Of a DNA stretch of 64,000 nucleotides, positions 16,530 to 56,150 are shown one piece after another (within the stretch, counting starts at the first letter, position 1; each line of letters starts with the position of its first letter). The position numbers were made by a program, and so were the translations under genes. The DNA comes from Pecten maximus (taxonomy: Eukaryota). The notes beneath the pieces are model-generated. The model was not told the DNA's origin. It saw only the letters and a program-made list of their open reading frames with translations, and did not search any database. The stretch is from contig NC_047023.1 in NCBI RefSeq assembly GCF_902652985.1, forward strand, positions 23,994,001 through 24,058,000. Reading direction: 5' to 3'.

Positions 16530-16920
16530 ACACGTGTACAAATCCTCGTTCTTTATCAGAGACACATATACAAATCCTCGTTCTTTATCAGAGACACATA
16601 TACAAATCCCCGTTCTTTATCAGAGATACATATACAAATCCTCGTTCTTTATCAGAGATACATATACAAATCCCCGTTCTTTATCAGAGATACATATACA
16701 AATCCTCGTTCTTTATCAGAGATACGTGTACAAATCCTCGTTCTTTATCAGAGATACATATACAAATCCTCGTTCTTTATCAGAGACACATATACAAACC
16801 CCGTTCTTTATCAGAGATACATATACAAATCCTCGTTCTTTATCAGAGATACGTGTACAAATCCTTGTTCTTCATCAGAGACACGTACACAAATCCTCGT
16901 TTTTTATCAGATACACGTGT
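16530..16920. repeat. 32-bp minisatellite (TACAAATCCTCGTTCTTTATCAGAGATACATA)n, ~12 copies; degenerate copies back to ~16305
   Basis: Visible tandem units at 32-bp spacing (16571, 16603...). This explains the overlapping ORFs at 16302-17031. Confidence 0.95.
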
Positions 16921-26155: not shown

Positions 26156-26790
26156 GACATTACACTGTATAACTTTATCCGTGACATTTACACTAGATAA
26201 TCATCTCAGTAATATTTACACTTGATAATTATCTTTGTAATATTTACACTGGGCAATTATCTTCGTAATATTTGCACTAGATAATTATCTCTGTGACACT
26301 TGAACTCGATAAATATTTCTGTAATATTTACACTAGATAATTTTCTCTGCAACACTTACTCTTAATTATTATCTCTGTAATATTAACACTGAATAATTTG
26401 CTCTATAATATTAACACTGAAATGTTTTATCTGTGACATTGACACTAGATACATTTACACTGGATACTTATCTCTGTAACATTTACACTGGATACTTATC
26501 TCTGTAACATTTACACGGGATACTTATCTCTGTAACATTTACTCGGGATACTTATCTCTGTAACATTTACACTGGATACTTGTCTCTGTAACATTTACAC
26601 GGGATACTTATCTCTGTAACATTTACACTGGATACTTATCTCTGTAACATTTACACGGGATCATTATCTCTGTAACATTTACACTGGATACTTATCTCGG
26701 TACCATTTACACTGGACACTTATCTCGGTACCATTTACACTGGATACTTATCTCTGTAACATTTACACGGGATCATTATATCTGTGACAC
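26156..26790. repeat. 28-bp minisatellite (ACATTTACACTGGATACTTATCTCTGTA)n; degenerate 5' half, homogeneous 26451-26790
   Basis: Visible tandem units. Confidence 0.93.
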
Positions 26791-29725: not shown

Positions 29726-30885
29726 TTATCTCGGGGTTACGGTGAAGTATATACCATCTATCTCGGGGTTACGGTGAAGTATATACCATCTATATCGGGG
29801 TTACGGTGAAGTATATACCATCTATCTCGAGGTTACGGTGAAGTATAAACCATCTATCTCGGGGTTACGGTGAAGTATATACCATCTATCTCGAGGGTTA
29901 TGGTGGAGTATAAACCATCTATCTCGAGGGTTACGGTGAAGTATATACCATCTATCTCGGGGTTACGGTGAAGTATATACCATCTATCTCGGGGTTACGG
30001 TGAAGTATATACCATCTATCTCAAGGGTTACGGTGAAGTATAAACCATCTATCTCGAGGGTTACGGTGGAGTATATACCATCTATCTCGAGGGTTACGGT
30101 GAAGTATATACCATCTATCTCGGGGTTACGGTGAAGTATAAACCATCTATCTCGAGGGTTACGGTGAAGTATATACCATCTATCTCGGGGTTACGGTGAA
30201 GTATATACCATCTATCTCGAGGGTTACGGTGAAGTATATACCATCTATCTCGGGGTTACGGTGAAGTATATACCATCCATCTCGGGGTTACGGTGAAGTA
30301 TAAACCATCTATCTCGGGGTTACGGTGAAGTATATACCATCTATCTCGGGGTTACGGTGAAGTATAAACCTTCTATCTCGGGGTTACGGTGAAGTATATA
30401 CCATTTATCTCGGGGTTACGGTGAAGTATATACCATCTATCTCAAGGGTTACGGTGATACCATCTATCTCAAGGGTTACGGTGAAGTATAAACCATCTAT
30501 CTCGAGGGTTACGGTGAAGTATATACCATCTATCTCGGGGTTACGGTGAAGTATATACCATATATCTCGAGGGTTACGGTGAAGTATATACCATCTATCT
30601 CGGGGTTACGGTGAAGTATAAACCATCTATCTCGGGGTTACGGTGAAGTATAAACCATCTATCTCGAGGGTTACGGTGATACCATCTATCTCAAGGGTTA
30701 CGGCGAAGTATATACCATCTATCTCGGGGTTACGGTGAAGTATATACCATCTATCTCGAGGGTTACGGTGAAGTATATACCATCTATCTCGGGGTTACGG
30801 TGAAGTATATACCATCTATCTCGAGGGTTATGGTAAAGTATATGCCATATATCTCGAGGGCTACGGTGAAGTATATAATATCTAT
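29726..30885. repeat. 32/33-bp minisatellite (TATCTCGGGGTTACGGTGAAGTATATACCATC)n, ~36 copies
   Basis: Visible tandem units, with CTCGGGG and CTCGAGGG length variants. Confidence 0.97.
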
Positions 30886-33800
30886 CTTGCTGTGATAGTA
30901 TTTTACAAGACATTTCCTTTTTAAGTTATGTTTATAAGAAAGTAAATACTCGTATCATCATAATGACTTCGTATTTGTTACCATGGTGACAGTTACACCT
31001 TTGAAAGTGGCTGTTTCATTAACCCTGTTACATCATTAATACTGAACAACTCATTTTCAAATTAAATTCAAACCTATGTAAGACAGCAAGAACTGTATAA
31101 AATGTTAATGTAACCGTCGAACCTTATTGGAATTAAGAATTTGTAGTCATTATCGATGAAAGTTTTCCAAAAGGTAAAGGAGTAAAATTGGTATATAAAT
31201 AAATAAAAAAAAAATTTCGTTTTTTTTCTTCTTCAACGATTTGGGCCTACTAAAGCGAATATGTGTTGAACGTGCATGTCGAGATTGAAAATTCAATAAA
31301 ACATAACTAGCACCAATTTTTCAGGGCAATACAATGTTTAATCAAGATAACACACATAAACAGCATTTGAACAACATCAACACTAAAGAGAATATTATAT
31401 AATAATAACAGTTAAAATCGATCTCCAACATCCAACCCTGATGCTTGGAGATTAAAATTTTAAAGTTATTGTATTAAGTCTGATAAGTGCAGCGACACTT
31501 TTTGCGGTAATATGAAGAGTTGTGGTTTTGCGGCTGGCTGGTTAGAATGCTAACTCGATTGTCTGGCCGAATAAATACGATATGACATTTTAAAGTATCG
31601 GCTGATCTATTGATGGATCAGGTTATTCTCATATAGTAAAAGTAGGATCGTTCACATTGCTCATTTCGGTCGCTTGTTTATGAATCATAGCGTCTGAGTT
31701 GACTTAGGGTTCCGATAGTGGTGGGAGATATACAAATCTATATATTATAAACACCAACTATAAAACGTGCATCACCATTTATATGTCAAATGATCGGCTT
31801 TTTAAGGTTTTTGGTCATCTTTTACTTTTGTATTGAATGTATCTATTGATAAGAAAAATGTTAATGATTTTTTATAATTGAATATCTCATTTTTTAGTTG
31901 TATTATACACATATTGGAAAAATTGATAGCATGCTAATTTGGTTAAAGATTGTAGAACAATGCCAAATCAACTAGATCAATTACTGTTCTAAAATTATAC
32001 AACATTATGTCTAAGCCTTCAATTTGTTCATTTCTTTGGCATCCAAGGCAACTAGGTTTATTTAGCAATTTCTCCATGAAAGCGCCAGAAAAAGAACGTT
32101 AACTAATAGTTCTGTAGAGTATAATTCAGATCTTCCACGCAGATAACATCTATAACAAACACAGAGAATCTGTTAACAAGAATTATTCTACCATTGTTCG
32201 AGTGTATCAGATGAATGACACTATTTATTAATATCTGTTCTGTTTCAGGATGTTCCGCTGTATCTATATTTAGTACAAGGACTCGACATTTAAGTGTATC
32301 ATGATAGGAAGTCCAAATATAGATACTTATATACAATATATCGTAGCTGGTCTGTACATTTAAATACCTGTACAATTACTATTGTATAGGCAAGTTACGT
32401 GACAAATAGGTATACCATGACATCCTAGGACGGCAAGTTTCTGATGCACGGTTTCAGACGGATTGCGTGGATCTAAGTATGGCCAGACAACCTGCTAAAA
32501 CAAATGACAAATAGTATCCGGTATGACATCCATTGTATGACTTTAAATAATACAACAATAGGTGTACAATGGTACATAACTTCAAAGAAGACCACTTTGT
32601 TGAATATGAGTTGCACGTTATGCCAACGTGTAAACGGAGTTGAAGGACTAATAAATAAATACTGATAAAATAATAATGATTTGATATGAATACATTTAAA
32701 CAGATAACTTTCCAAAAATATTCAGGCATTGCGACGTTTTGAAAATGAGAACCAGGGAAATGGCAGCGTAATTGACAAAAACATGTATTTTAATAAACAT
32801 CACGTTAAGTATACGATGTTACACATTGCGTAAGGGAATAGACAATTGTGCTATGAGATCATGATGGCGGTAATATTTAACCTGCCTTTCTCGAATTTCT
32901 CTGTTGCTTCACAGACGTCTACTATTTATAGTAAGAGTTGTATCACGATGAACAATACATTGGAACCAAGCCCTGACTATCGACTTTGAAACATGACTAC
33001 CTAAGGATGGGAAGCAATTTACATTTTTATAGAAAAGCAACAATTAGGAAAATGAAATTACCTGATATTGCAGGGTTTGTATGTCCTTGGATACTTTATG
33101 AAGGGGGTTAACAGCTGAACAAGAGAGATGTCCCTAATTCCAAGTTCTTGATGCTAGACCTATGTTTTTTTTGGCATCGGCATGAAGTTCATATTTTATT
33201 GAACATATCAAAATATCTAAAAGTGAAGTTAATTAAAGATTTGAATTGCTTTATTTCCTATTAAAAGCTAGAGTCATTTAGGACAGTCAATATTGAAGGA
33301 ATTGACAGGATTGTTGTTTTGATATAACTTTCTCTTGATTCTTCACACAACAATACTGCCGTATGACTTACCAATAACATCTGTGATCGAACAGGTGCTG
33401 TATTCATGGCATACAGTAACGACAAAATGTATGTATAGGGAATGTTACTTCCGCAGCGCTCTCAGAAAGGATATTACAAGTCGGCGAATGATGTATCGCC
33501 AACATTACAGAGATAGTATGTCATCTTGTTGGACGCTAGCATCCGGACCAGACGCCTGGACCAAACATTTGCATTACATTTGGACAGTGAATGGTCGGGT
33601 GGGCTCGTGAGGGGATGACAATGTCTCCGCACGACATTTCGTTAATACTACCTCGGAGTAGCCATTATCTACGTCAAATAGACAGTCGACGCCATATTTG
33701 GTCTATTCGCAAGTAAATATTATTTGAACCCGGGAAATAAATCTGCTGGGTCCTTGGTTATCGTTCGACATAGGTTTCGAAATCCCTGCTTATTTTCGTG

Positions 33801-34407: not shown

Positions 34408-36592
34408 AGTAAATACCGGTAACCATTGTTCTGTGGACTTATGAAATAAACACCGGTAACCATTGTTCTGTAGACATAGGCAATAAACACCGGTAACCAT
34501 TGTTCTGTAGACATAGGCAATAAACACCGGTAACCATTGTTCTGTAGAAATAGAAATAAACACCGGTAACGATTGTTCTCCAGACAAAGAAAATAAACAC
34601 CGGTAACCATTTTTCTGTGGACATATGAAATAAACACCGGTAACCATTGTTCTGTGGACATATGAAATAAACACCGGTAACCATTGTTCTGCTTTAATAG
34701 GAAATAAACACCGGTAACCATTGTTCTGTAGAAATACAAATAAACACCGGTAACCATTGTTCTCCAGACAAAGAAAATAAACATCGGTAACGATTGTTCT
34801 GCAGACATAGGAAATAAACACTGGTAACCATTGTTCTGTAGAAATAGAAATAAACACCGGTAACCATTGTTCTCCAAACATAGGAAATAAACACTGGTAA
34901 CCATTGTTCTGTAGAGATAGAAATAAACACCGGTAACCATTGTTCTCCAGACATAGGAAATAAACACCGGTAACCATTGTTCTGTAGACATAGAAATAAA
35001 CACCGGTAACCATTGTTCTGCAGACATAGGCAATAAACACCGGTAACCATTGTTCTGTAGAAATAGAAATAAACACCGGTAACCATTGTTCTGTAGAAAT
35101 AGAAATAAACACCGGTAACCATTGTTCTCCAGACAAAGAAAATAAACATCGGTAACCATTGTTCTGCAGACATAGGAAATAAACACTGGTAACCATTGTT
35201 CTGTAGAAATAGAAATAAACACCGGTAACCATTGTTCTCCAGACATAGGAAATAAACACCGGTAACCATTGTTCTGTAGACATAGAAATAAACACCGGTA
35301 ACCATTGTTCTGCAGACATAGGCAATAAACACCGGTAACCATTGTTCTGTAGAAATAGAAATAAACACCGGTAACCATTGTTCTGTAGAAATAGAAATAA
35401 ACACCGGTAACCATTGTTCTCCAGACAAAGAAAATAAACATCGGTAACCATTGTTCTGCAGACATAGGATATAAACACTGGTAACCATTGTTCTGTAGAA
35501 ATAGAAATAAACACCGGTAACCATTGTTCTCCAGACATAGGAAATAAACACTGGTAACCATTGTTCTGTAGACATAGAAATAAACACCGGTAACCATTGT
35601 TCTGTAGACATAGGAAATAAACACCGGTAACCATTGTTCTGTAGACATAGAAATAAACACCGGTAACCATTGTTCTGCAGACATAGGACATAAACACCGG
35701 TAGCCATTGTTCTGTAGAAATAGAAATAAACACCGGTAACCATTGTTCTCCAGAAATAGGAAATAAACACCGGTAACCATTGTTCTGTAGAAATAGAAAT
35801 AAACACCGGTAACGATTGTTCTGCAGACATAGGAAATAAACACCGGTAACCATTGTTCTGTGGACATATGAAATAAACACCGGTAACCTTTGTTCTCCAG
35901 ACATAGGAAATAAACACCGGTAACCATTGTTCTCCAGACATAGGAAATAAACACCGGTAACGATTGTTCTGTGGACATATGAAATAAACACCGGTAACCA
36001 TTGTTCTGTGGACATATGAAATAAACACCGGTAACTACTTTGTTCTCCAGACATAGGAAATAAACACCGGTAACCATTGTTCTCCAGACATAGGAAATAA
36101 ACACCGGTAACCATTGTTCTGTGGACATAGAAAATAAACACCGGTAACGATTGTTCTGCAGACATAGGAAATAAACACCGGTAACCATTGTTCTACAGAC
36201 ATAGGAAATAAACACCGGTAACCATTGTTCTGTGGACATAGAAAATAAACACCGGTAACGATTGTTCTGCAGACATAGGAAATAAACACTGGTAACCATT
36301 GTTCTCCAGACATAGGAAATAAACACCGGTAACGATTGTTCTGCAGACATAGGAAATAAACACCGGTAACCATTGTTCTGTGGACATTTGAAATAAACAC
36401 CGGTAACCATTGTTCTGTGGACATAGAAAATAAACACCGGTAACGATTGTTCTGCAGACATAGGAAATAAACACTGGTAACCATTGTTCTGTGGACATAG
36501 AAAATAAACACTGGTAACCTTTGTTCTCCAGACATAGGAAATAAACACCGGTAACGATTGTTATGTAGAAAAAGAAACAAACACCGGTAATT
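34408..36592. repeat. 36/37-bp minisatellite (AAATAAACACCGGTAACCATTGTTCTGTAGACATAGG)n, ~59 copies
   Basis: Visible tandem units. The 444-718 aa minus-strand ORFs are its three frames. Confidence 0.97.
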
Positions 36593-42993: not shown

Positions 42994-43170
42994 AGGTACA
43001 GTTGTATGTGTAGGTACAGTTGTATGTGTAGGTACAATTGTATGTGTAGGTACAGTTGTATGTGTAGGTACAGTTGTATGTGTAGGTACAGTTGTATGTG
43101 TAGGTACAGTTGTATGTGTAGGTACAGTTGTATGTGTAGGTACAGTTGTATGTGTAGGTACAGTTGTATG
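42994..43170. repeat. 18-bp minisatellite (AGGTACAGTTGTATGTGT)x~10
   Basis: Near-perfect tandem units. Confidence 0.97.
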
Positions 43171-43714
43171 TTGTCATAAACCATCATAAATACTTTCACT
43201 GAGTAACTTATTAAATCACATTACGTAGCTATGCTTTCCTTAAACCAAATTCATTGAATTACGTATGTAATTACATTTAATTCGTTTTGTGTCTTCTCAT
43301 ACTATATAACAGTGTCAGCATTGATGATACTCCCAGGTCGCCATTATATAGCAATTTTTGTAGGAAAGGAAATCATCGATGACTTTATTTTAAGTTTCCG
43401 ATTTCCGTCTATTTCCTCCTGCACTCTTACCAACAAAAGAGATTCACAACACCTCCAGCCAAATTTCTCATGTCTGCAGCCTCGTCCAGCCTGACTGACA
43501 TACAGATTTACTTACACTTGCTGGTCGCCGCTTGCGTCCATCTAAAAGCCGTGATGGAGACAGTACGTGCTTATAATCAAATACACGACTGTCTACAAAT
43601 GAATTTTAGATTTACTTATAAAATGCCTGTTCCGGGGGTTTCATTTCGCTTGTCGGTCTCTACTAGTGAAAATGGAGCAGTGATGTTGAGAAGTATCGGC
43701 ATGTCAGACAGAGA

Positions 43715-43930: not shown

Positions 43931-44244
43931 ATAGACAGAAAGGCCCTACTGTAATCTGGTAGGATGTCTGGATATGTCCCTTTAGTAGAAAATGGACCGA
44001 CTATTCAAGGGATTATACGGATATATACTGTATATATATATACATGTATATATAAACCCAACAAATTCAGTTCTATTTATTTAACATTGTATATATACTT
44101 TGCTTGGTAAATCTCTCCGTATGCCAACGAAGCTCTATGGCTGCTTTCCTGCTTAAATTCACACGCTGATATGTACATGGGGATATTATATTTTCCTAAC
44201 ATTCGCAGATTAGTCTCCCGTTTTACGTGTTCAAGATTTCTCCC

Positions 44245-45682
44245 TAAGTTAGATGTCCCTGTCAACCCCTAGGTAAGATTTCCCTGTCAACCCCTAGGTA
44301 AGAAGTCTCTGTCATACCCTAGGTTAGATTTCCCTGTCAACCCCTTGGTAAGAAGTCTCTCTCAACCCCTAGGGTTAGATGTCCCTGCCAACCCCTAGGT
44401 AAGAAGTCCCTGTCAACCCCTAGGTAAGATGTCCCTGCCAACCCCTAGGTAAGATTTCCCTGTCAACCCCCAGGTAAGAAGTATCTGTCAACCCCTAGGT
44501 TAGATGTCCCTGTCAACCCTAGGGTCAGATGTTCCTGTCAACCCCTAGGTAAGAAGTCTCTGTCAACCCCTAGGTTAAATGTCCCTGTCAACCCCTGGGG
44601 TTAGATGTCCCTGTCAACCCCTAGGGTAAGAGTCGCCCCCCACCCCCCTTACATTTAAATTTCTCTGTCGCCCCCTAGGTTTAGATTTCTCTGTCAACCC
44701 ATAGGTAAGATTTCTCTGTCAACCCCTAGGTAAGATTTCCCTGTCAACCCCTAGGGTCAGATGTTCCTGTCAACCCCTAGGTAAGATGTCCCTGTCAACC
44801 CCTGGGGTTAGATGTCCCTGTCAACCCCCGGGGTTAGATGTCCCTGTCAACCCCTAGGGTAAGAGTCGCCCCCTACATTTAGACTTCCCTGTCGTCCCCT
44901 AGGTTTAGATTTCTATGTCGCCCCTAGGTTTAGATTTCTATGTCGCCCCCTAGGTTTAGATTTCTATGTCGCCCCTAGGTTTAGATTTCTATGTCGCCCC
45001 TACATTTAGACTTCCCTGTCGCCCCCTAGGTTTAGATTTCTATGTCGCCCCTAGGTTTAGATTTCTATGTCGCCCCCTAGGTTTAGATTTCTCTGTCGCC
45101 CCCAAGGTTTATATTTCTCTGTCGCCCCCAAGGTTTATATTTCTCTGTCGCCCCCTAGGTTTAGATTTCTCTGTCGCCCCCTAGGTTTAGATTTCTCTGT
45201 CGCCCTCTAGGTTTAGATTTCTCTGTCGCCCCCAAGGTTTATATTTCTCTGTCGCCCCCTAGGTTTAGATTTCTCTGTCGCCCTCTAGCTTTAGATTTCT
45301 CTGCCGCCCCCTAGCTTTAGATTTCTCTGTCGCCCCCTAGCTTTATATTTCTCTGTCGCCCCCAAGGTTTATATTTCTCTGTCGCCCCCAAGGTTTATAT
45401 TTCTCTGTCGCCCCCAAGGTTTATATTTCTCTGTCGCCCCCTACGTTTAGATTTCTCGGTCGCTCTCTAGGGTTATATTTCCCTGTCAATCCCTGGGGTT
45501 AGATTTTTCTCTGACAACCCCTACATTTAGATTTCTCTGTCGCCCCCTAGGTTTAGATTTCACTGTCGCCCCCTAGGTTTAGATTTCTCTGTCGCCCCCA
45601 AGGTTTATATTTCTCTGTCGCCCCCTACGTTTAGATTTCTCTGTCGCCCTTTAGGGTTAGATTTCTCTGTCAACCCCTAGGG
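44245..45682. repeat. 26-bp minisatellite with two sequence domains (GTCCCTGTCAACCCCTAGGTAAGAT, then TTCTCTGTCGCCCCCTAGGTTTAGAT), ~54 copies
   Basis: Visible tandem units at 26-bp spacing (45061, 45087). Confidence 0.95.
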
Positions 45683-46160: not shown

Positions 46161-46777
46161 ACACCCTCGACCTTAATGACGTGTCAGAAAATCTCCGACC
46201 TTCGTGGAGGTAATCTTGATTGTGTAACCCTTGACAGAGCCTCGGACAACCAAGAATGTCACCTCTTCTATAACTCTTTTTTGTAGACCACCAACATTAT
46301 ATAATCACTACCTTTAATTTGGCATTGAGCGTTATACATGTATACAAATCTATGAACTTATACGTGGATAGTATGAATTTACACACCACGGTATGATCGT
46401 GACCGACGCGATCCCTGAATCGAAGGCTCTGACTGGTCGCCTCGGACACTGATCCCTGTAATAATGATCATGTGTCAGATTGCCCCTAGAGTGCTGCTGA
46501 AATGCTCTTATCCTGGGGAGTGAATCCTTAATCCCAAATTTTCTAAGGTATTATATCTTTAACTGTTATCGATCATGACTTCATCACAAGTATAGGACAA
46601 GGAATGCGAGGATGGTCATGGTCAAGCTGTCCGTTATCTGTATTCTGATATCACTGTCTGTGTTCACGGGAAATAAACCAGATACTATCAAAATGAAATT
46701 CAATTTTTACTAAGAATCGATAAAACGAGGATATACAAACAAAATGTAGTTTGTTTTAATAATATCAGCGAAAAAGA

Positions 46778-46847
46778 AATGTGTATGTTTACGAAAAGCG
46801 AATGTGTAAGGAATGTGTATGTTTACGAAAAGCGTATGTGTAAGAAA
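46778..46847. repeat. 34-bp tandem duplication in a TGTATG-rich low-complexity tract
   Basis: AATGTGTATGTTTACGAAAAGCG(A/T)ATGTGTAAG occurs twice. Confidence 0.8.
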
Positions 46848-48675
46848 TATGTTAGTGTGAGAAAAATGAAAGTGTTAGAAAGGTGTATGTATAAGAAATG
46901 TATGTTTGTGAAGAAATATGTATACATGTATGTAATTCAATCGGAAAAGTGCAAAACATGAACATTCATTGAATACCGAAGCAACGGGGAATACAGCATG
47001 GTGCTATCGTGGATGTATTGTCAAATCACATGTAGTAAACCCTGCTTTGAGTACAGATTAGTATGGTTTCGGTTTTATGTGACCCTAGTTGTGTTAGGAA
47101 TTGGACTTGGTGTAATGTACAATGTATAAATGAGTCTAGTTGTTTGTGATATATTGAGATATAACAGGATACCACGTCTGTACCTACTAATTTTACGACT
47201 ATTACCTTGGATTTCGGCCTCAGGAAACGGAGAGTTCGGCCTATGAATAATAAAATATTCCCATAATAAATCGATATTATCAGCTTTGCTGTTTTTGAAC
47301 ATATTTTCGGGGGTAAACATTGTTCACTTCGATTCTAGCTTGTAAACATGATCATGCTTGATTCATTACGAAGAAAGCCGAGTCAGTCATATGATTCGTC
47401 ACGTGACGAGGTCATTTACTTCTGACGGAATGAAAACACGTGTTTTTTCCGAAGATATGACGAAAAGGCTCGTGTGGTTTTCCGACTGGGTAACGATCGG
47501 TAATATATGGATTCGATCATTTCTTATTTTAAGTTATCAACCAAGAATTTTCAATTTTAGTAATAAGTAGCAAGTGTTTTGCAACAAACCCTTGTAAAAT
47601 ATCACGTTTTATAACTTTTTCTCCTAATGATTTTTAACATTATTTAAGTTTTAATCAGTATACGTTTTAATTGTATCAAAATTGTGAACGCCTAACGGCT
47701 CACTGTCAGTAAGTATAAATCATACTGTAACGCACCTGTCCTTTTATGTTGCTACTATGGTAGTGTATATGTGACACCTGCCGGAATTACTTCAAAGTGA
47801 GTCTCGGGAAATAGGAATCATGTCGTGACTCATAAGAGTACAGACTTGGACGGATGTCACATTACGTCCTCCTCAATGTGTCAAGACGAAAACAATTTCT
47901 GGCGTCTGAAAAATTGGGTGAGACACGGTGTGTATTCAATGTTTCCATGGATATGGGGACATATTTCCTAGGAGACTCCAGGTGATGTCACCGTACATAT
48001 AAGTACTTTCAATGACAAACTTAAGATAAATTGAAAGTTTAGTAAATTCTTTAACAATCAGGAGATTACTGTTATAAACACATATTTATATTTAGTTTAT
48101 CGCTAGTGATGTACTATATCATAACAATCACGATAATACTACCGTAATAAAAAGTTCATGTTGAGATCAGACTTTGTCTAAAATACTTTGTATGTATAAT
48201 CACAAACGTAGCTCTTGTTTACAGCTTGGTGAGTATTCTGAGGAAATTCACCCGTGTGGTTAAACAAGTACTTGTTTCACTTATTTCCTTTATAATTATC
48301 ATGTATTGCTAGTTTGTATTTGATAAACAGTCTAGGATCTAGGTTATAGATGGGATCTTTTGTATTTTTTTATCGGACACATGCAAAAAAATACATAAAA
48401 AACAAAAGATGTATGATTATAAATGAAAAGGTGTATGTTGCATTAATCTCCTTCTGCGCGAGGACACCAATTATATTTACTTTCCTGCTTTTGATCAATA
48501 AGATTATTTTGAACCTGAAAAAAGATGTAAGTTAACACTATGACGGACGGGTAAACGTCTGATTAACTGAAAATATATCACATCAGGGTAAAATATAGCT
48601 TTAGACACACTTTGAAATATTGAACAAATGTCACACACGATGTTAGCAGTTTACAGAACAAATTGAGAGTTAAAT

Positions 48676-48720
48676 GGTATCTTACAGCTTTTTCGTCCTT
48701 CTAGGACTCGTCAGTGATGT
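48676..48720 (-). ncRNA. Minimal hammerhead ribozyme motif 1 (catalytic core intact)
   Basis: Minus strand: ACATCA-CTGACGA-GTCC-TAGAA-GGAC-GAA-AAAGCTGT-A-AGATACC. This gives CUGANGA, a 4-bp helix II, GAAA, a short near-palindromic helix III and a GUA site. Helix I is decayed. Confidence 0.7.
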
Positions 48721-48724
48721 TAGG

Positions 48725-48770
48725 GATATTATAAAGCTGTTTCGTCCTTCTTGGACTCGTCAATGATGCT
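48725..48770 (-). ncRNA. Minimal hammerhead ribozyme motif 2 (C3U variant), 49 nt from motif 1
   Basis: Minus strand: AGCATCA-TTGACGA-GTCC-AAGAA-GGAC-GAA-ACAGCTTT-A-TAATATC. Confidence 0.65.
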
Positions 48771-49265
48771 AAGGTCCTCAAGTGTTTATGATATGAGGTG
48801 ACCAAAAACAAAACTCGAAATAGATAAAAAAATAAATAAATGCCAATATCTGGATGGTAAGGTGTACAGGATACGGGGACAAAGGGATCAGGAAGTGTTT
48901 ACTTTACCGTGTCAATGACGACAACCTTCATGTAAATATTGGTCAACTCCAATGGCACGTTCTCAGAATGGGACGGCGACAACCATCGGATACCGATATC
49001 TGAACACATCTAACTCCATAGCGCGTTACAGTAACGCAGTCGACACCTTTAGTGCTATATTAGGACAGAAACAGTTAATATCAAATTACTGTGACCTGTG
49101 AACAACTTAGTAAGTAAGACGGGAATGTCAATATTTTCAGATGCACGATAGAAAACTCGTTACGCTAAGTCGGGTGAAAAGTTGTCTCGGTATTATTTAT
49201 ACATCAATTACAATATTGCATGGTGTATCATACTGTGTCTTTTCATCTCACATTAACTCTGGTGA

Positions 49266-50831
49266 ATGGTGTACCTATCCTCTGATGTATGGTGTACCTA
49301 TCCTCTGATGTATGGTGTACCTTTCCTCTGATGTATGGTGTACCTCTCCTCTGATGTATGGTGTACCTCTCCTCTGATGTATGATGTACCTATCCTCTGA
49401 TGTACGGTGTACCTATCCTCTGATCTATAGTGTACCTCTCCTCTGATGTACGGTGTACCTATCCTCTGATGTACGGTGTACCTTTCCTCTGATGTATGGT
49501 GTACTTATCCTCTGATGTATGGTGTACATCTCCTCTGATGTACGGTGTACCTATCCTCTGATCTATAGTGTACCTCTCCTCTGATGTACGGTGTACCTAT
49601 CCTCTGATGTACGGTGTACCTTTCCTCTGATGTATGGTGTACTTATCCTCTGATGTATGGTGTACCTCTCCTCTGATGTACGGTGTACCTATCCTCTGAT
49701 GTACGGTGTACCTATCCTCTGATCTATAGTGTACCACTCCTCTGATGTACGGTGTACCTATCCTCTGATGTACGGTGTACCTATCCTCTGATGTATGGTG
49801 TACCTATCCTCTGATGTATGGTGTACCTATCCTCTGATGTACGGTGTACCTATCCTCTGATGTATGGTCTACCTTTCCTCTGATGTATGGTGTATCTATC
49901 CTCTGATGTATGGTGTACCTATCCTCTGATGCATGGTGTACCTATCCTCTGATGTCTGGTGTACCTATCCTCTGATGCATGATGTACCTATTCTCTGATG
50001 TATGGTGTACCTATCCTCTGATGTCTGGTGTACCTATCCTCTGATGTACGGTGCACCTATCCTCTGATGCATGATGTACCTATTCTCTGATGTATGGTGT
50101 ATCTATCCTCTGATGTATGGTGTACCTATCCTCCGATGAACGGTGTACCTATCCTCCGATGAACGGTGTACCTATCCTCTGATGTACGGTGTACCTATCC
50201 TCTGATGTATGGTGTACCTATCCTCTGATGTACGGTGTACCTATCCTCTGATGTACGGTGTACCTATCCTCTGATGTATGATGTACCTATCCTCTGATGT
50301 ACGGTGTACCTATCCTCTGATGTATGGTGTACTTTTCCTCTGATGTATGGTGTACCTATCCTCTGATGTATGGTGTACCTATCCTCTGATTATGGTGTAC
50401 CTATCCTCTGATGTATGGTGTACCTATCCTCTGATGTATGATGTACCTATCCTCTGATGTATGGTGTACCTATCCTCTGATGTATGGTGTACCTATCCTC
50501 TGATGTATGGTGTACCTATCCTCTGATGTATGGTGTACCTATCCTCTGATGTATGGTGTACCTATCCTCTGATGTACGGTGTACCTACCCTCTGATGTAT
50601 GATGTACCTATCCTCTGATGTATGGTGTACCTATCCTCTGATGTATGGTGTACCTATCCTCTGATGTATGGTGTACGTATCCTCTGATGTACGGTGTACC
50701 TACCCTCTGATGTATGATGTACCTATCCTCTGATGTATGGTGTACCTCTCCTCTGATGTACGGTGTACCTATCCTCTGATGTACGGTGTACCTATCCTCT
50801 GGTGTATGGTGTACCTATCCTCTGATGTATG
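49266..50831. repeat. 23-bp minisatellite (ATGGTGTACCTATCCTCTGATGT)n, ~68 copies
   Basis: Visible tandem units at 23-bp spacing (49266, 49289). Confidence 0.98.
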
Positions 50832-50990
50832 AATCATGGTAGTAGTTAAACATTTCTTACACATTCTTAATATTTTACCTCGATATCGTTAGTTCCAAAC
50901 TGTAAAATGATAGTAAAAATGCACACAATATGTTAGCACCCTCCAAACCCAAATGAGAAATAGATGCAGAAGAACCTTAATGAATTAAAC

Positions 50991-51037
50991 TGTGCCATAC
51001 AACAGTTTTGTCCTTCTGGGACTCGTAAGTGATGCTA
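50991..51037 (-). ncRNA. Degenerate hammerhead motif 3 (G5 and G12 substituted; probably inactive)
   Basis: Minus strand: TAGCATCA-CTTACGA-GTCC-CAGAA-GGAC-AAAA-CTGTT-GTA-TGGCAC. Its flanks are homologous to those of motifs 1 and 2. Confidence 0.55.
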
Positions 51038-52785
51038 CGGGTGTTGATACCAATGAGGTGCCTGAAAATTGAAAAGGTTCGAAAGAAATGTCTGTAAGAG
51101 GAGATGTAAAAGACAAGTCAAACAATACTCAGCGGATCTTATTATATTGAGAAATCCTTTGTTCATTCCGTTGATAAACTGGCGCTTTTCAACAAAAATA
51201 AATCAACCAATGATGGTTAAATGTAGAAAGTAAGTAATGTGTTTCCAGACCCTCAAGTCCATTTGATATGACTAATTGTGACATTTCGTGTAGTTTTCGT
51301 GTACCTATACAGACAGATATAAAGGATCGATTTTGGGCCAGATATTAATTTATCAACTGCCTCCGTAAGTGGGTGCAGCATCACCGCTGATACCAGCAGC
51401 CTTCCCGCACATTCCTACCGATAGTCATACCGCTCTTGGATCAGGATTTATTTGTTTGCTCCAGCGACTTTCTCTATATTTCACATCCATAGACGTGCAC
51501 AATGTATTGTAAAATGAAGATAAATACCCCAGTGTCTTAGACGAATGTTTAAATCTTCGTTACGGGCAAGAGGGGTATTGTGCTCGAGTAGAGAACAGCG
51601 GAATATCGATAGCGACATTGGCAGGGGAGAATCAGGGCCCCTCCCTATGGGGTAATGGTAAATCAAAATTTAATTGATCTATTAATCTCTGAATATGATT
51701 TTTTTTCTTTGCCAATCATCATCACACACGCAGTTTAACTGTGGAGGAATTGCAGCGCTAAAACGGGACACAATGGATGTGATACCTCTTGAGAAATAGT
51801 GAATCTCAGCAATTACGATGTCCGACTCTTACAATGACCAGGCATAGATATTGACCAATCACCATAGAGAAATCCAATAAGGCCGGGATACATGGCCTTC
51901 ATTTCCTGACTATTGGCGTTGTCACGGTGAATACATATCAGACGTTCTCAATGAACAGCAAGTAAGATGAGATCAGAATTGTATTGTTCGGAGCAAATTG
52001 GCTTTATTCCTCACCAATTTCTTTAATCCGCTCTGACAAGCATTGACTGTGGAATCAATTTGATAGTTCTAGAAAAGAGAACCGTAAGGTATTTAGCTTC
52101 AGCAGATTGGCAAACATCGTCCCATTCTCAACTATACACACTTGTAGCGAACCTCTCGATTTATCTGTAGTAATTTGCTCGAGGGAAGACGCGGAAATAT
52201 GATTTTCCAATGCGCTTGTATAAAATTGGAGTGTCTTTGACACACATTCCTTATTTCTGAAAGGAGAAATGATTTGTTTCATCGCGAAATGCGTAAAAAT
52301 CATTGCATACAAACAAAATGATTAGGTTAATAATTTTATATTCTTCTCTATTTCGTACGGAGACGTCACGACAAGATTAACTCTGCTGCAAACGGCTATC
52401 CCTTAGCTGTTCACTAGTTATACTGTCCAGTTATGTTCTAAGCGTAGACAATACTCATCCCATACCTTTATATATTTAACAGGTATTGTTCACTTTTCCA
52501 TTGCTAAGGATTCACGTGTGTTGAGTATTTTGACTGGTTGATGTTCATCGGTGACAATTTTACATTGACTCAATAGCATAAGAACGCATTGCAATAGAAA
52601 ACATCACAACAATAATTCAGTAGGTGCATACAGCGGGAAAAGTTTTAAAACTAATGTATCGCTAAATTGTAACATCAACATTTACAATATATGTGTAATG
52701 ATGAGTTACGAATGACGTACTTATATCATTTTCATAGATGAATTGATTTTGTTTTATACATTTTAGATGCATGCATATAGCTTAA

Positions 52786-55700
52786 GCCCCGGTTACACTG
52801 TGCCTGTATTGACTACAGTGTATCAAGGATGTACACGTTTCTACATGTATAAACCAGAGTAAACCATACCGTACTCACGGTGTTACTACACGGTACTGGT
52901 ACGGTATGTCACGGTGTTACTACACGGTACTGGTACGGTATGTCACGGTGTTACTACACGGTACTGGTACGGTATGTCACGGTGTTACTACACGGTACTG
53001 GTACGGTATGTCATGGTGTTACTACACGGTACTGGTACGGTATGTCACGGTGTTACTACACGGTACTGGTACGGTATGTCACGGTGTTACTACATGGTAC
53101 TGGTACGGTATGTCACGGTGTTACTACACGGTACCGGTACGGTATGTCACGGTGTAATTACAGGATACTGGTACGGTATGTCACGGTGTTACTACACGGT
53201 ACCGGTACCGGTATGTCACGGTGTTACTACACGGTACTGGTACGGTATGTCACGGTGTTACTACACGGTACCGGTACGGTATGTCACGGTGTTACTACAC
53301 GGTACTGGTACGGTATGTCACGGTGTTACTACACGGTACTGGTACGGTATGTCACGGTGTTACTACATGGTACTGGTACGGTATGTCACGGTGTTACTAC
53401 ACGGTACTGGTACGGTATGTCCCGTACCAGTATGTCACGGTGTTACTACACGGTACTGGTACGGTATGTCACGGTGTTACTACACGGTACTGGTACGGTA
53501 TGTCACGGTGTTACTACACGGTACTGGTACGGTATGTCACGGTGTTACTACACGGTACTGGTACGGTATGTCACGGTGTTACTACACGGTACTGGTACGG
53601 TATGTCACGGTGTTACTACACGGTACTGGTACGGTATGTCACGGTGTTACTACACGGTACTGGTACGGTATGTCACGGTGTTACTACACGGTACCGGTAC
53701 GGTATGTCACGGTGTTACTACACGGTACCTGGTACGGTATGTCACGGTGTTACTACACGGTACTGGTACGGTATGTCACGGTGTTGCTACACGGTACTGG
53801 TACGGTATGTCACGGTGTTACTACACGGTACTGGTACGGTATGTCACGGTGTTACTACACGGTACTGGTACGGTATGTCACGGTGTTACTACACGGTACT
53901 GGTACGGTATGTCACGGTGTTACTACACGGTACTGGTACGGTATGTCACGGTGTTACTACACGGTACTGGTACGGTATGTCACGGTGTTACTACACGGTA
54001 CTGGTACGGTATGTCACGGTGTTACTACACGGTACCTGTACGGTATGTCACGGTGTTACTACACGGTACCTGTACGGTACGTCGCGGTGTTACTACACGG
54101 TACTGGTACGGTATGTCACGGTGTTACTACACGGTACTGGTACGGTATGTCACGGTGTTACTACACGGTACTGTACGGTATGTCACGGTGTTACTACACG
54201 GTACCTGTACGGTATGTCACGGTGTTACTACACGGTACTGGTACGGTATGTCACGGTGTTACTACACGGTACTGGTACGGTATGTCACGGTGTTACTACA
54301 CGGTACTGGTACGGTATGTCACGGTGTTACTACACGGTACTGGTACGGTATGTCACGGTGTTACTACACGGTACTGGTACGGTATGTCACGGTGTTACTA
54401 CACGGTACTGGTACGGTATGTCACGGTGTTACTACACGGTACTGGTACGGTATGTCACGGTGTTACTACACGGTACCTGTACGGTATATCCCGGTGTTAC
54501 TACACGGTACCTGTACGGTATATCCCGGTGTTACTACACGGTACCTGTACGGTATGTCACGGTGTTACTACACGGTACTGGTACGGTATGTCACGGTGTT
54601 ACTACACGGTATATGTACGGTATGTCACGGTGTTACTACACGCTACCGGTACGGTATGTCACGGTGTTACTACACGGTACTGGTACGGTATGTCACGGTG
54701 TTACTACACGGTACTGGTACGGTATGTCACGGTGTTACTACACGGTACTGGTACGGTATGTCACGGTGTTACTACACGGTACTGGTACGGTATGTCACCG
54801 TGTTACTACACGGTACTGGTACGGTATGTCATGGTGTTACTACACGGTACTGGTACGGTATGTCACGGTGTTACTACACGGTACTGGTACGGTATGTCAC
54901 GGTGTTACTACACGGTACTGGTACGGTATGTCACGGTGTTACTACACGGTACTGGTACGGTATGTCACGGTGTTACTACACGGTACCAGTACGGTATGTC
55001 ATGGTGTTACTACACGGTACTGGTACGGTATGTCACGGTGTTACTACACAGTACCGGTACTCTACGTCACGGTGTTACTACACGGTACTGGTACGGTATG
55101 TCACGGTGTTACTACACGGTACCGGTACCGGTATGTCACGTTGTTACTACACGGTACTGGTACGGTATGTCACGGTGTTACTACACGGTACTGGTACGGT
55201 ATGTCACGGTGTTACTACATGTTACTGGTACGGTATGTCACGGTGTTACTACACGGTACTGGTACGGTATGTCACGGTGTTACTACACGGTACTGGTACG
55301 GTATGTCACGGTGTTACTACACGGTACTGGTACGGTATGTCACGGTGTTACTACACGGTACTGGTACGGTATGTCACGGTGTTACTACACGGTACGTGTA
55401 CGGTATGTCACGGTGTTACTACACGGTACCGGTACGGTATGTCACGGTGTAATTACATGATACTGGTACGGTATGTCACGGTGTTATTACACGGTACTGG
55501 TACGGTATGTCACGGTGTTACTACACGGTACTGGTACGGTATGTCACGGTGTTACTGCATGGTACCGGTACGGTATGTCACGGTGTTACTACATGGTACC
55601 GGTACAGTATGTCACGGTGTTACTACACGGTACTGGTACGGTATGTCAAGGTGTTATTTCATGGTTCTGTTGCGGTATGTCAAGGTGACGGCTTATGCCG

Positions 55701-56150
55701 GTAACACTAAATATGACAATATTTACTACGAATCACTACGGATCAGTACGGATGGCCACGGTACGCCCCGATAGCAGTACGGTACCACTACGACGGTTTG
55801 CCTCCACATGCTATGTAAAGTTTGCGTCACCGTAGGTGGCCCTAGAACACTACGATTGTTCCTGGTTGGCCATGTGTGTACAGAAGTCCGACGGTGATCC
55901 TACGGTTCTACTTCTGTGATAGTCTTGCGCTAAAAATCTACGATTCGACTACAGTTTGCCACGGAAGTTGAATGCAGAAATAAACTATCGTAGAGAGCTA
56001 CGGTCCAGCACGGATCACTACGGATCGACCCGGTTTGAGTACGGACTCGCGTTGGATTAGCATGGTTCCCCAGGTTTGCATAACCGTAGATAAATACAAA
56101 AATGTAGCTTACCGTGGCTTTCAACCAGCATAGTGTGATAGTACTGGGGC
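52786..56150. mobile_element. PIF/Harbinger-type non-autonomous element carrying an internal satellite
   Basis: TAA on both sides (52783-52785 and 56151-56153). Termini GCCCCGGTTACACTGTGC and GCATAGTGTGATAGTACTGGGGC form an imperfect TIR with a small insertion. The interior is rich in ACGG subrepeats. Confidence 0.7.
52875..55688. repeat. 34-bp satellite (GTCACGGTGTTACTACACGGTACTGGTACGGTAT)n, ~82 copies
   Basis: Visible tandem units. The unit has no plus-strand stop codon in any frame, which gives the 743-964 aa ORFs. Confidence 0.98.

What the first reader, a model, noticed from the sequence alone, without database searches (positions are those of the whole stretch)
48676..48770. Tandem hammerhead-ribozyme pair with mutually compensatory helix III (compact dimeric hammerhead)
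Seen: two minus-strand motifs 49 nt apart, each of the form (C/T)TGACGA-GTCC-5 nt loop-GGAC-GAAA. Their helix-III segments, ACAGCTTT (motif 2) and AAAGCTGT (motif 1), each deviate from the palindrome ACAGCTGT at symmetric positions. Neither folds well alone, but they are exact 8-bp reverse complements of each other. Pairing them gives an inner type III-like hammerhead whose helix I is TAATAT-CCCTA-ACATCA (two A-C mismatches from a perfect TGATGT/ACATCA stem), plus an outer type I-like hammerhead. Established: minimal type I hammerheads with palindromic helix III that cleave as dimers are typical of Penelope-like elements and metazoan non-LTR retrozymes. Inference: this is a very compact obligate-dimer arrangement, possibly once selected, now partly decayed in helix I.
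Basis: partly seen in the sequence, partly recalled or inferred. Interest (0 to 1): 0.85.

Follow-up and report, generated by a model that had tools for sequence, protein, structure and literature searches.

The report
Decayed two-unit hammerhead ribozyme repeat
The two motifs are a real but worn-out two-copy piece of a 49-base self-cutting "hammerhead" RNA repeat that occurs thousands of times in the king scallop genome, and their matching pair of mutations is about what chance alone would produce.

Summary
Two 49-nt units lie on the minus strand at 48769-48677. Their helix III 8-mers, ACAGCTTT and AAAGCTGT, are exact reverse complements.

The pair belongs to a large family. The assembly matches Pecten maximus xPecMax1.1 exactly (918,306,378 bp, 3,983 scaffolds). 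It holds an estimated 9,000 such units, in arrays of up to about 45, and this scan has already met the family on other windows of this genome.

Intact units elsewhere pass Rfam's type I hammerhead threshold (35-36.5 bits against 34). The window's units do not (best 27.3 against 48.5).

The "mutual compensation" looks coincidental:
- Each variant recurs alone elsewhere (85 and 65 copies).
- The adjacent combination occurs once, here, and about 1.0 is expected by chance.
- 248 adjacent unit pairs from other loci show no excess of compensated pairs.
- Catalytic core positions have changed as often as loop positions.

In this copy, the 5' unit has lost the essential C3. Inner helix I is predicted not to form. 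Outer helix I has two mismatches. The locus is best read as an inactive relic. No RNA data could be obtained.

The parts
48733..48769 (-). Unit 1, the 5' hammerhead unit. It runs: outer helix I 5' strand GCATCA, core TTGACGA (C3 replaced by T), helix II GTCC/GGAC with loop AAGAA, GAA, and helix III segment ACAGCTTT (G to T at position 7 of the family palindrome).
48715..48732 (-). Cleavage-site A (48732) followed by the inner helix I hairpin TAATAT-CCCTA-ACATCA. The family form is TGATGT-CCCTA-ACATCA. Two G-to-A changes here leave two A-C mismatches.
   Evidence: In the fold energies, forcing this helix raises the energy from -16.2 to -9.7 kcal/mol.
48684..48714 (-). Unit 2, the 3' hammerhead unit. 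It has an intact core CTGACGA, helix II GTCC/GGAC with loop TAGAA, GAA, and helix III segment AAAGCTGT (C to A at position 2 of the palindrome).
48677..48683 (-). Second cleavage-site A (48683) and the outer helix I 3' strand AGATAC. The family form is TGATGC. Against GCATCA this leaves two mismatches.
48770..48874 (-). 5' arm of the old dispersed parent element (copy A). It is shared at about 75-90% identity with many other loci in the genome.
48614..48676 (-). 3' arm of parent element copy A. It is shortened by a deletion of roughly 45 nt just after the ribozyme. The surviving part matches the end of the arm in other copies (the motifs AACTCTCAATTTG and GCTAACAT..TGTGTG).
50895..51120 (-). 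Copy B of the same parent element, with a single dead hammerhead unit at 51029-50998 (CTTACGA, GGAC-AAAA, helix III segment ACTGTTGT). It is about 74% identical to copy A, so it is not a recent duplicate of it. Boundaries are approximate.

Best explanation
The locus is an inactive, mutated two-unit copy of the king scallop's 49-nt hammerhead repeat, sitting in the middle of an old dispersed non-coding element about 250-300 nt long.

How the intact family should work (inferred from sequence and from the established double-hammerhead mechanism): the strand carrying CUGACGA is transcribed. The palindromic ACAGCUGU segments of two neighbouring units pair into an 8-bp helix III. Each end of that helix carries a catalytic core, with helix II (GUCC/GGAC) and a 6-bp helix I. 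Helix I is either the inner hairpin UGAUGU-CCCUA-ACAUCA or the outer pair GCAUCA/UGAUGC. The RNA cuts itself after GUA, which for two units would release a 49-nt piece.

In this copy, helix III and both helix II stems survive. The inner helix I has two A-C mismatches and is predicted not to form. The outer core has U in place of the essential C3, and the outer helix I has two mismatches. Self-cleavage is therefore expected to be absent or negligible.

The two helix III substitutions that happen to restore pairing are most likely two independent neutral mutations.
For: Family membership:
- More than 226 matches in the own genome, many stepping by 49 nt.
- Arrays of 49-nt units in about 25 loci and arrays of 30-45 units.
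- Exact 16-mer counts: GGACGAAACAGCTGTA 3,137 with reversed control 0; GAGTCC-N5-GGACGAAA 3,069 with control 2.

A genuine hammerhead: intact units in L021 and L002 score 35-36.5 bits on Rfam Hammerhead_1, gathering score 34.

Decay in this copy:
- No Rfam hit at gathering score; best is 27.3 against 48.5.
- Energies are -16.2 kcal/mol with H2+H3 and -9.7 once inner helix I is forced. The minimum-energy fold (-17.5) keeps H3 and both H2 stems but no helix I. An intact reference pair gives -27.8 for the full double hammerhead.

Compensation is at chance level:
- The T variant occurs 85 times and the A variant 65 times. They are adjacent only here. About 1.0 such adjacency is expected, from about 8,900 units and 7,100 adjacent pairs.
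- In 248 adjacent pairs elsewhere there are 153 mismatches, 77 wobbles and 3 compensated positions, against 4.9 +/- 2.2 with random partners.
- The other two-unit copies examined (L012, L004) are not compensated.

Neutral decay of the family:
- Substitution frequency is 0.095 in core positions and 0.097 / 0.052 in the two loops.
- Units with dead cores have been amplified to more than 20 copies, for example in L006.

Double-hammerhead mechanism: PMC6155905 and PMC4209133.
Against:
- Taken on its own, two single substitutions landing on the same base pair with complementary bases has a probability of about 1/24. That is mildly unusual for a single locus.
- The adjacency statistics come from about 30 loci chosen by similarity to this window, not from the whole genome.
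- A-C mismatches can pair as protonated wobbles, so some residual helix I is not strictly excluded.
Confidence: 0.85

Rival explanations
1. The two units were selected as an obligate intramolecular heterodimer. On this view the non-palindromic but mutually complementary helix III forces the two neighbours to pair with each other rather than with themselves or with other copies. The element was, or still weakly is, a compact self-cleaving module.
For: The 8/8 Watson-Crick pairing arises from one change on each side of the same base pair. The predicted minimum-energy fold keeps this helix and both helix II stems. The inner core CTGACGA...GAAA is intact, and Rfam Hammerhead_3 aligns it end to end at E=0.0018.
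Against: The combination is unique in the genome and is expected about once by chance. The family shows no excess of compensated pairs and no conservation of core over loops. Selection for cleavage should also have kept helix I and C3 of the other core, and both are lost.
Confidence: 0.06
2. The locus has a role that is not ribozyme cleavage, for example as a structured RNA hairpin or small-RNA source, or as a DNA-level repeat element. On this view the 8-bp pairing is retained for that reason.
For: The inter-unit helix and two hairpins are the predicted minimum-energy fold. The region is embedded in a repeat-rich stretch with many minisatellites.
Against: Nothing points to it. The flanks are ordinary diverged copies of a dispersed element. 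No known RNA family other than hammerhead matches. No expression data could be obtained.
Confidence: 0.05
3. Chance resemblance: the motifs are not hammerhead-derived at all.
For: The window's units fail Rfam gathering thresholds.
Against: The pattern is expected 0.01 times per window and found 3 times. The units align base for base with thousands of family members, and the intact ones pass Rfam Hammerhead_1.
Confidence: 0.01

Closest known systems
Double (dimeric) hammerheads of newt satellite 2 transcripts and avocado sunblotch viroid (Forster et al. 1988, as described in PMC6155905 and PMC4209133)
   Same: Two tandem hammerhead copies in one RNA. Each has a helix III too short or unstable to work alone. 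The two pair into one extended helix III that serves both catalytic cores. The topology is type I with a palindromic helix III.
   Different: Here the spacing is only 49 nt, so the inner helix I is closed by a 5-nt loop and the repeat unit contains nothing but the ribozyme. Newt satellite 2 units are a few hundred bp. This particular copy is mutated, and its activity is untested.
Metazoan non-LTR retrozymes (Cervera and de la Pena 2020, PMC7229834), including the mussel repeats of about 350-390 bp
   Same: A type I hammerhead in low-GC, non-coding, repetitive DNA of a bivalve. Copies are both tandem and dispersed. Intact family members fit Rfam Hammerhead_1.
   Different: Retrozyme monomers are about 170-400 nt and are repeated whole. 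Here only the 49-nt ribozyme module is repeated, inside a solitary element of about 250-300 nt. Circular RNAs have not been shown.
Minimal hammerheads of Penelope-like elements (Cervera and de la Pena 2014, PMC4209133)
   Same: Hammerheads in metazoan repeats that are thought to act as dimers through palindromic positions in helix III.
   Different: As that paper describes them, PLE motifs have a long helix II (6-8 bp), a short helix I, an extra nucleotide before helix II, and lie in terminal repeats flanking an RT/GIY-YIG ORF. Here helix II is 4 bp, helix I is 6 bp, there is no extra nucleotide, and no ORF lies between the two copies.
Schistosoma Sm-alpha and cave-cricket hammerhead satellites (as summarised in PMC6155905)
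   Same: Invertebrate tandem or repetitive DNA carrying type I hammerheads.
   Different: Those units are several hundred bp with the ribozyme as a small part. The scallop unit is the ribozyme alone.

Membership tests
Hammerhead ribozyme (Rfam clan CL00010; RF00163 type I, RF00008 type III) | Conserved core strand C3-U4-G5-A6-N7-G8-A9 | tested here: inconclusive
   Unit 2 has CTGACGA, so it is met. Unit 1 has TTGACGA (C3 replaced by T), so it is not met.
Hammerhead ribozyme (Rfam clan CL00010; RF00163 type I, RF00008 type III) | Conserved G12-A13-A14 followed by A15.1 | tested here: met
   GAAA is present in both units.
Hammerhead ribozyme (Rfam clan CL00010; RF00163 type I, RF00008 type III) | Helix II with a G10.1-C11.1 pair | tested here: met
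   GTCC/GGAC, 4 bp, in both units. Both stems are kept in the predicted minimum-energy fold.
Hammerhead ribozyme (Rfam clan CL00010; RF00163 type I, RF00008 type III) | Helix III with an A15.1-U16.1 pair and a cleavable NUH triplet | tested here: met
   Met only through inter-unit pairing: ACAGCUUU with AAAGCUGU, 8 bp. The triplets are UUA and GUA.
Hammerhead ribozyme (Rfam clan CL00010; RF00163 type I, RF00008 type III) | A stable helix I next to the cleavage site | tested here: not met
   Inner helix I has 4 of 6 pairs with two A-C mismatches, and forcing it costs about +6.5 kcal/mol. Outer helix I has 4 of 6 pairs. The family form is a perfect 6 bp.
Hammerhead ribozyme (Rfam clan CL00010; RF00163 type I, RF00008 type III) | Score at or above Rfam's gathering threshold | tested here: not met
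   The window has no hit at gathering score. The best is Hammerhead_3 at 27.3 against 48.5. Intact relatives at other loci do pass Hammerhead_1, at 35-36.5 against 34.
Hammerhead ribozyme (Rfam clan CL00010; RF00163 type I, RF00008 type III) | Site-specific self-cleavage | not testable with these tools
   This needs in vitro transcription or mapping of RNA ends.
Double hammerhead (newt satellite 2 / ASBVd type) | Two tandem units in one transcript whose helix III segments pair into one extended helix | tested here: met
   The units are 49 nt apart on the same strand. The 8-bp inter-unit helix is part of the predicted minimum-energy fold.
Metazoan non-LTR retrozyme | Whole monomers of about 170-400 nt repeated in tandem, each with one type I hammerhead | tested here: not met
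   The repeat unit is 49 nt. The parent element occurs as solitary copies. The two copies in the window are 2,266 nt apart and about 74% identical.
Metazoan non-LTR retrozyme | Expressed as linear and circular RNAs of monomer size | not testable with these tools
Penelope-like element hammerhead | Located in terminal repeats that flank an RT/GIY-YIG ORF | tested here: not met
   No ORF of 80 aa or more lies between copy A and copy B. That interval is a 23-nt minisatellite.

The most novel reading that the evidence does not exclude
The reciprocal substitutions were fixed because they turn a promiscuous palindromic helix III into a private, non-palindromic one. A two-unit element would then fold only into its own intramolecular double hammerhead. 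That would be a natural example of selection for partner specificity between tandem ribozymes, later disabled by the helix I mutations.
Probability: 0.04. Interest if true: 0.6.

Novelty: new member of a known kind. Interest (0 to 1): 0.22.

Why it matters
For this locus, little: it is a dead copy, and its most eye-catching feature is coincidence. That result also sets a baseline for the other "compensatory" observations that will turn up in this large repeat family.

The family behind it is of moderate interest to ribozyme and repeat biologists. It is a repeat of about 9,000 units whose 49-nt monomer is nothing but a type I hammerhead, far shorter than the 170-400-nt retrozyme monomers. I found no paper describing it in the library searched. 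If young, intact arrays are transcribed, they should chop themselves into 49-nt RNAs. That would be a convenient natural system for studying double-hammerhead folding among many identical neighbours. The scan has already reported this family from other windows of the same genome.

Tried and rejected
Nothing can be said about expression or cleavage ends.
- Whole-element tandem repeats (retrozyme-style): three loci with irregular hammerhead spacings were fetched. All proved to be 49-nt arrays with decayed units in between.
- 3' arm homology: a genome search with the 300 nt downstream of the pair found nothing for the first 157 nt, and found a different repeat family for 48523-48380. BLAST against post-array flanks was nearly blank. 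The relationship only became visible by eye and in a MAFFT alignment. It showed a deletion of about 45 nt in the window's copy.
- A fuzzy-regex flank search timed out. It was replaced by a substitution-only search.
- Literature: searches for hammerhead plus bivalve, satellite, minisatellite, scallop or Pecten maximus gave nothing relevant, mostly hammerhead sharks.
- Considered and rejected: that copies A and B are an LTR-like pair of one insertion. They are only about 74% identical, no closer to each other than to copies on other chromosomes.
- Considered and rejected: a Penelope-like element context. There is no ORF.

Full report
**1. What is in the sequence**

Read on the minus strand, 48769-48677 consists of two 49-nt units.

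- Unit 1: GCATCA, TTGACGA, GTCC-AAGAA-GGAC, GAA, ACAGCTTT, A, then TAATAT-CCCTA.
- Unit 2: ACATCA, CTGACGA, GTCC-TAGAA-GGAC, GAA, AAAGCTGT, A, then AGATAC.

The core pattern is far beyond chance. It matches 3 times in the window against 0.01 expected. The third match is a more decayed unit at 51029-51006.

Rfam finds nothing at gathering score in the window. A permissive local scan aligns the inner, type III-like hammerhead end to end at 48685-48739(-). It scores only 27.3 bits against a gathering score of 48.5.

**2. What it belongs to**

*The genome.* The assembly has 918,306,378 bp in 3,983 pieces. The contig lengths 60,076,705 and 44,824,366 equal the total, scaffold number, longest scaffold and N50 published for Pecten maximus xPecMax1.1 (PMC7191990). 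The genome is therefore the king scallop.

*The repeat family.* A search of this genome with the locus gave more than 226 matches. Many step by 49 nt within arrays. In the fetched loci the units repeat with a 49-nt period, from 1 to more than 30 per locus, and arrays of 30-45 units exist.

*The commonest unit.* In order, it is:

| Segment | Sequence |
|---|---|
| Helix I 3' strand | TGATGT |
| Loop 1 | CCCTA |
| Helix I 5' strand | ACATCA |
| Core | CTGACGA |
| Helix II with loop 2 | GTCC-TAGAA-GGAC |
| Core | GAA |
| Helix III segment | ACAGCTGT |
| Cleavage-site base | A |

These are natural sequences, found unchanged many times.

*Copy numbers.* Exact-word counts in the genome are 3,137 for GGACGAAACAGCTGTA (reversed control 0) and 3,069 for GAGTCC-N5-GGACGAAA (control 2). 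Scaling by my sample gives roughly 8,900 recognisable units.

*A genuine hammerhead.* Intact units at other loci pass Rfam's curated threshold for the type I hammerhead, at 35-36.5 bits against 34. The family is a bona fide hammerhead with a palindromic helix III.

*Earlier notes.* Earlier notes of this scan describe the same 49-nt hammerhead repeat on other windows of this genome. I used them as leads and re-derived the points above myself.

**3. The setting in the window**

The pair sits in the middle of an old dispersed non-coding element.

- About 100 nt upstream (48874-48770) is shared at 75-90% identity with many loci.
- The downstream arm (48676 to about 48614) matches the far part of the arm seen in other copies. 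Roughly 45 nt have been deleted next to the ribozyme.
- From 48523 downwards a different repeat family begins.

I looked at 25 loci found through the 5' arm alone. Eight carry one unit, three carry arrays of 10-17 units, and 14 carry no recognisable ribozyme module. One unit therefore looks like the usual old state. Two-unit copies such as this one, L012 and L004 are simply a low repeat number.

A second copy of the element lies 2,266 nt upstream on the same strand, at about 51120-50895. It has a single dead unit (CTTACGA, GGAC-AAAA). It is only about 74% identical to the first copy, so the two are not a recent duplicate pair. A 23-nt minisatellite and no ORF of 80 aa or more lie between them. 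That argues against a Penelope-like element.

**4. Is the reciprocal helix III change more than chance?**

The two changes are G to T at position 7 in unit 1 and C to A at position 2 in unit 2. They fall on the same base pair of the inter-unit helix and convert a C-G pair into an A-U pair.

- *Genome counts.* The T variant occurs 85 times and the A variant 65 times, mostly alone or copied along arrays beside units of their own kind, where they create mismatches. The adjacent combination occurs exactly once, in this window. The position lists show no case in the opposite order either. With about 8,900 units and 7,100 adjacent pairs, random association predicts about 1.0 such pair.
- *Adjacent pairs elsewhere.* In 248 adjacent unit pairs from other loci, the 1,984 inter-unit helix III positions comprise 1,751 unchanged, 153 mismatches, 77 wobbles and 3 compensated. 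Random partners give 4.9 +/- 2.2 compensated positions.
- *Other helices.* Helix II shows no excess of compensation (5 against 4.9). Helix I shows a marginal one (6 against 2.5). Half of those six cases come from first units whose upstream flank was being scored as if it were a helix strand.
- *Rates of change.* Substitution frequencies are flat along the unit: 0.095 in the invariant core positions, against 0.097 and 0.052 in the two loops. Units with dead cores have been amplified to more than 20 copies, for example in L006.

After amplification the family evolves neutrally, and arrays grow at the DNA level whether or not the ribozyme works. For a single locus, two single substitutions being mutually compensatory has a probability of about 1/24. 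Across thousands of pairs such cases are expected.

**5. Would this copy work?**

Energy evaluation:

| RNA | Structure evaluated | Energy (kcal/mol) |
|---|---|---|
| Window pair | Both helix II stems plus 8-bp inter-unit helix III | -16.2 |
| Window pair | The same, with inner helix I forced | -9.7 |
| Window pair | The same, with outer helix I forced as well | -7.7 |
| Window pair | Minimum-energy fold (no helix I) | -17.5 |
| Intact natural pair | Full double hammerhead | -27.8 |
| Intact natural pair | Minimum-energy fold | -29.3 |

In addition, the outer hammerhead's core has T in place of C3. C3 is one of the invariant core nucleotides (established knowledge of hammerhead mutagenesis; the conserved core is described in PMC6155905).

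I infer that neither site cleaves at a meaningful rate. This is a prediction, not a measurement.

**6. How the family should work**

This is inferred. As in the double hammerheads of newt satellite 2 and avocado sunblotch viroid (PMC6155905; PMC4209133), two neighbouring units pair their palindromic helix III segments. Each end of the extended helix then forms a three-way junction with helix II and helix I. Cleavage follows GUA.

With 49-nt spacing, the inner helix I is closed by the 5-nt loop CCCUA. That gives a type III topology inside the array and a type I topology at its ends.

One detail supports past function in the source copies. The outermost helix I pair is G-C in the end pair (GCATCA with TGATGC). 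It is A-U in the internal pair (ACATCA with TGATGT), consistently across loci.

**7. Comparison with known systems, and verdict**

The closest known things are double hammerheads in tandem satellite transcripts and metazoan non-LTR retrozymes. The family differs in having a repeat unit that is only the ribozyme: 49 nt, against 170-400 nt in PMC7229834. It fails the retrozyme feature of whole-monomer tandem repetition, and it fails the Penelope-like element features.

The window's locus is a decayed member, and its apparent design is coincidental.

Interest is low for this locus. The family itself is a modestly interesting compact variant that the scan has already recorded elsewhere.

Noticed in passing
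window 50895-51120 (-) and 49257-50831: A second, single-unit and dead copy of the hammerhead-bearing element lies 2,266 nt upstream of the pair on the same strand. A 23-nt minisatellite of about 68 copies fills most of the interval, starting just after that copy's 3' arm.
   Followed up: partly
L044:~1575, L045 and L046:~1604 (G000 C13:19.22 Mb, C8:16.56-16.58 Mb): These copies of the parent element keep both arms but have no hammerhead module between them. The element therefore exists with and without the ribozyme. Which state is ancestral is open.
   Followed up: no
L006 (G000 C1:28.59 Mb), L014, L016: Arrays of more than 20 units in which every unit carries the same inactivating changes, for example CTGATGT with GAGC-AAA, or a destroyed helix II. 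This shows the arrays expand at the DNA level regardless of ribozyme integrity.
   Followed up: partly
many loci (L002, L005, L006, L011, L013, L014, L023): The last pair of helix I differs consistently between array ends (GCATCA with TGATGC, a G-C pair) and array interior (ACATCA with TGATGT, an A-U pair). This is a two-sided difference shared across loci. It hints that array-bearing copies, not only single-unit copies, were the ones that spread.
   Followed up: partly
window 3617-11337: A 7.7-kb array of a 22-nt repeat (about 350 copies) with extreme GC skew: +0.63 to +0.75 in 4-kb windows.
   Followed up: no
window 1035-2175, 16537-16911, 26186-26789, 29727-30887, 34410-36590, 42994-43171, 44242-45681, 46774-46909, 52875-55687: The window is unusually dense in unrelated minisatellites, with periods of 53, 32, 28, 32, 37, 18, 25-26, 17 and 34 nt. 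Together with the 22-nt and 23-nt arrays they cover roughly a third of the 64 kb.
   Followed up: no
window 52880-55774 (+): Three overlapping ORFs of 743-964 aa lie entirely within the 34-nt minisatellite, one in each + frame. Given that, they are almost certainly artefacts of a repeat unit without stop codons, not genes.
   Followed up: no
window 48380-48523: A different dispersed repeat family (40 or more copies at 75-87% identity) lies about 90 nt downstream of the recognisable 3' arm of the hammerhead element.
   Followed up: no
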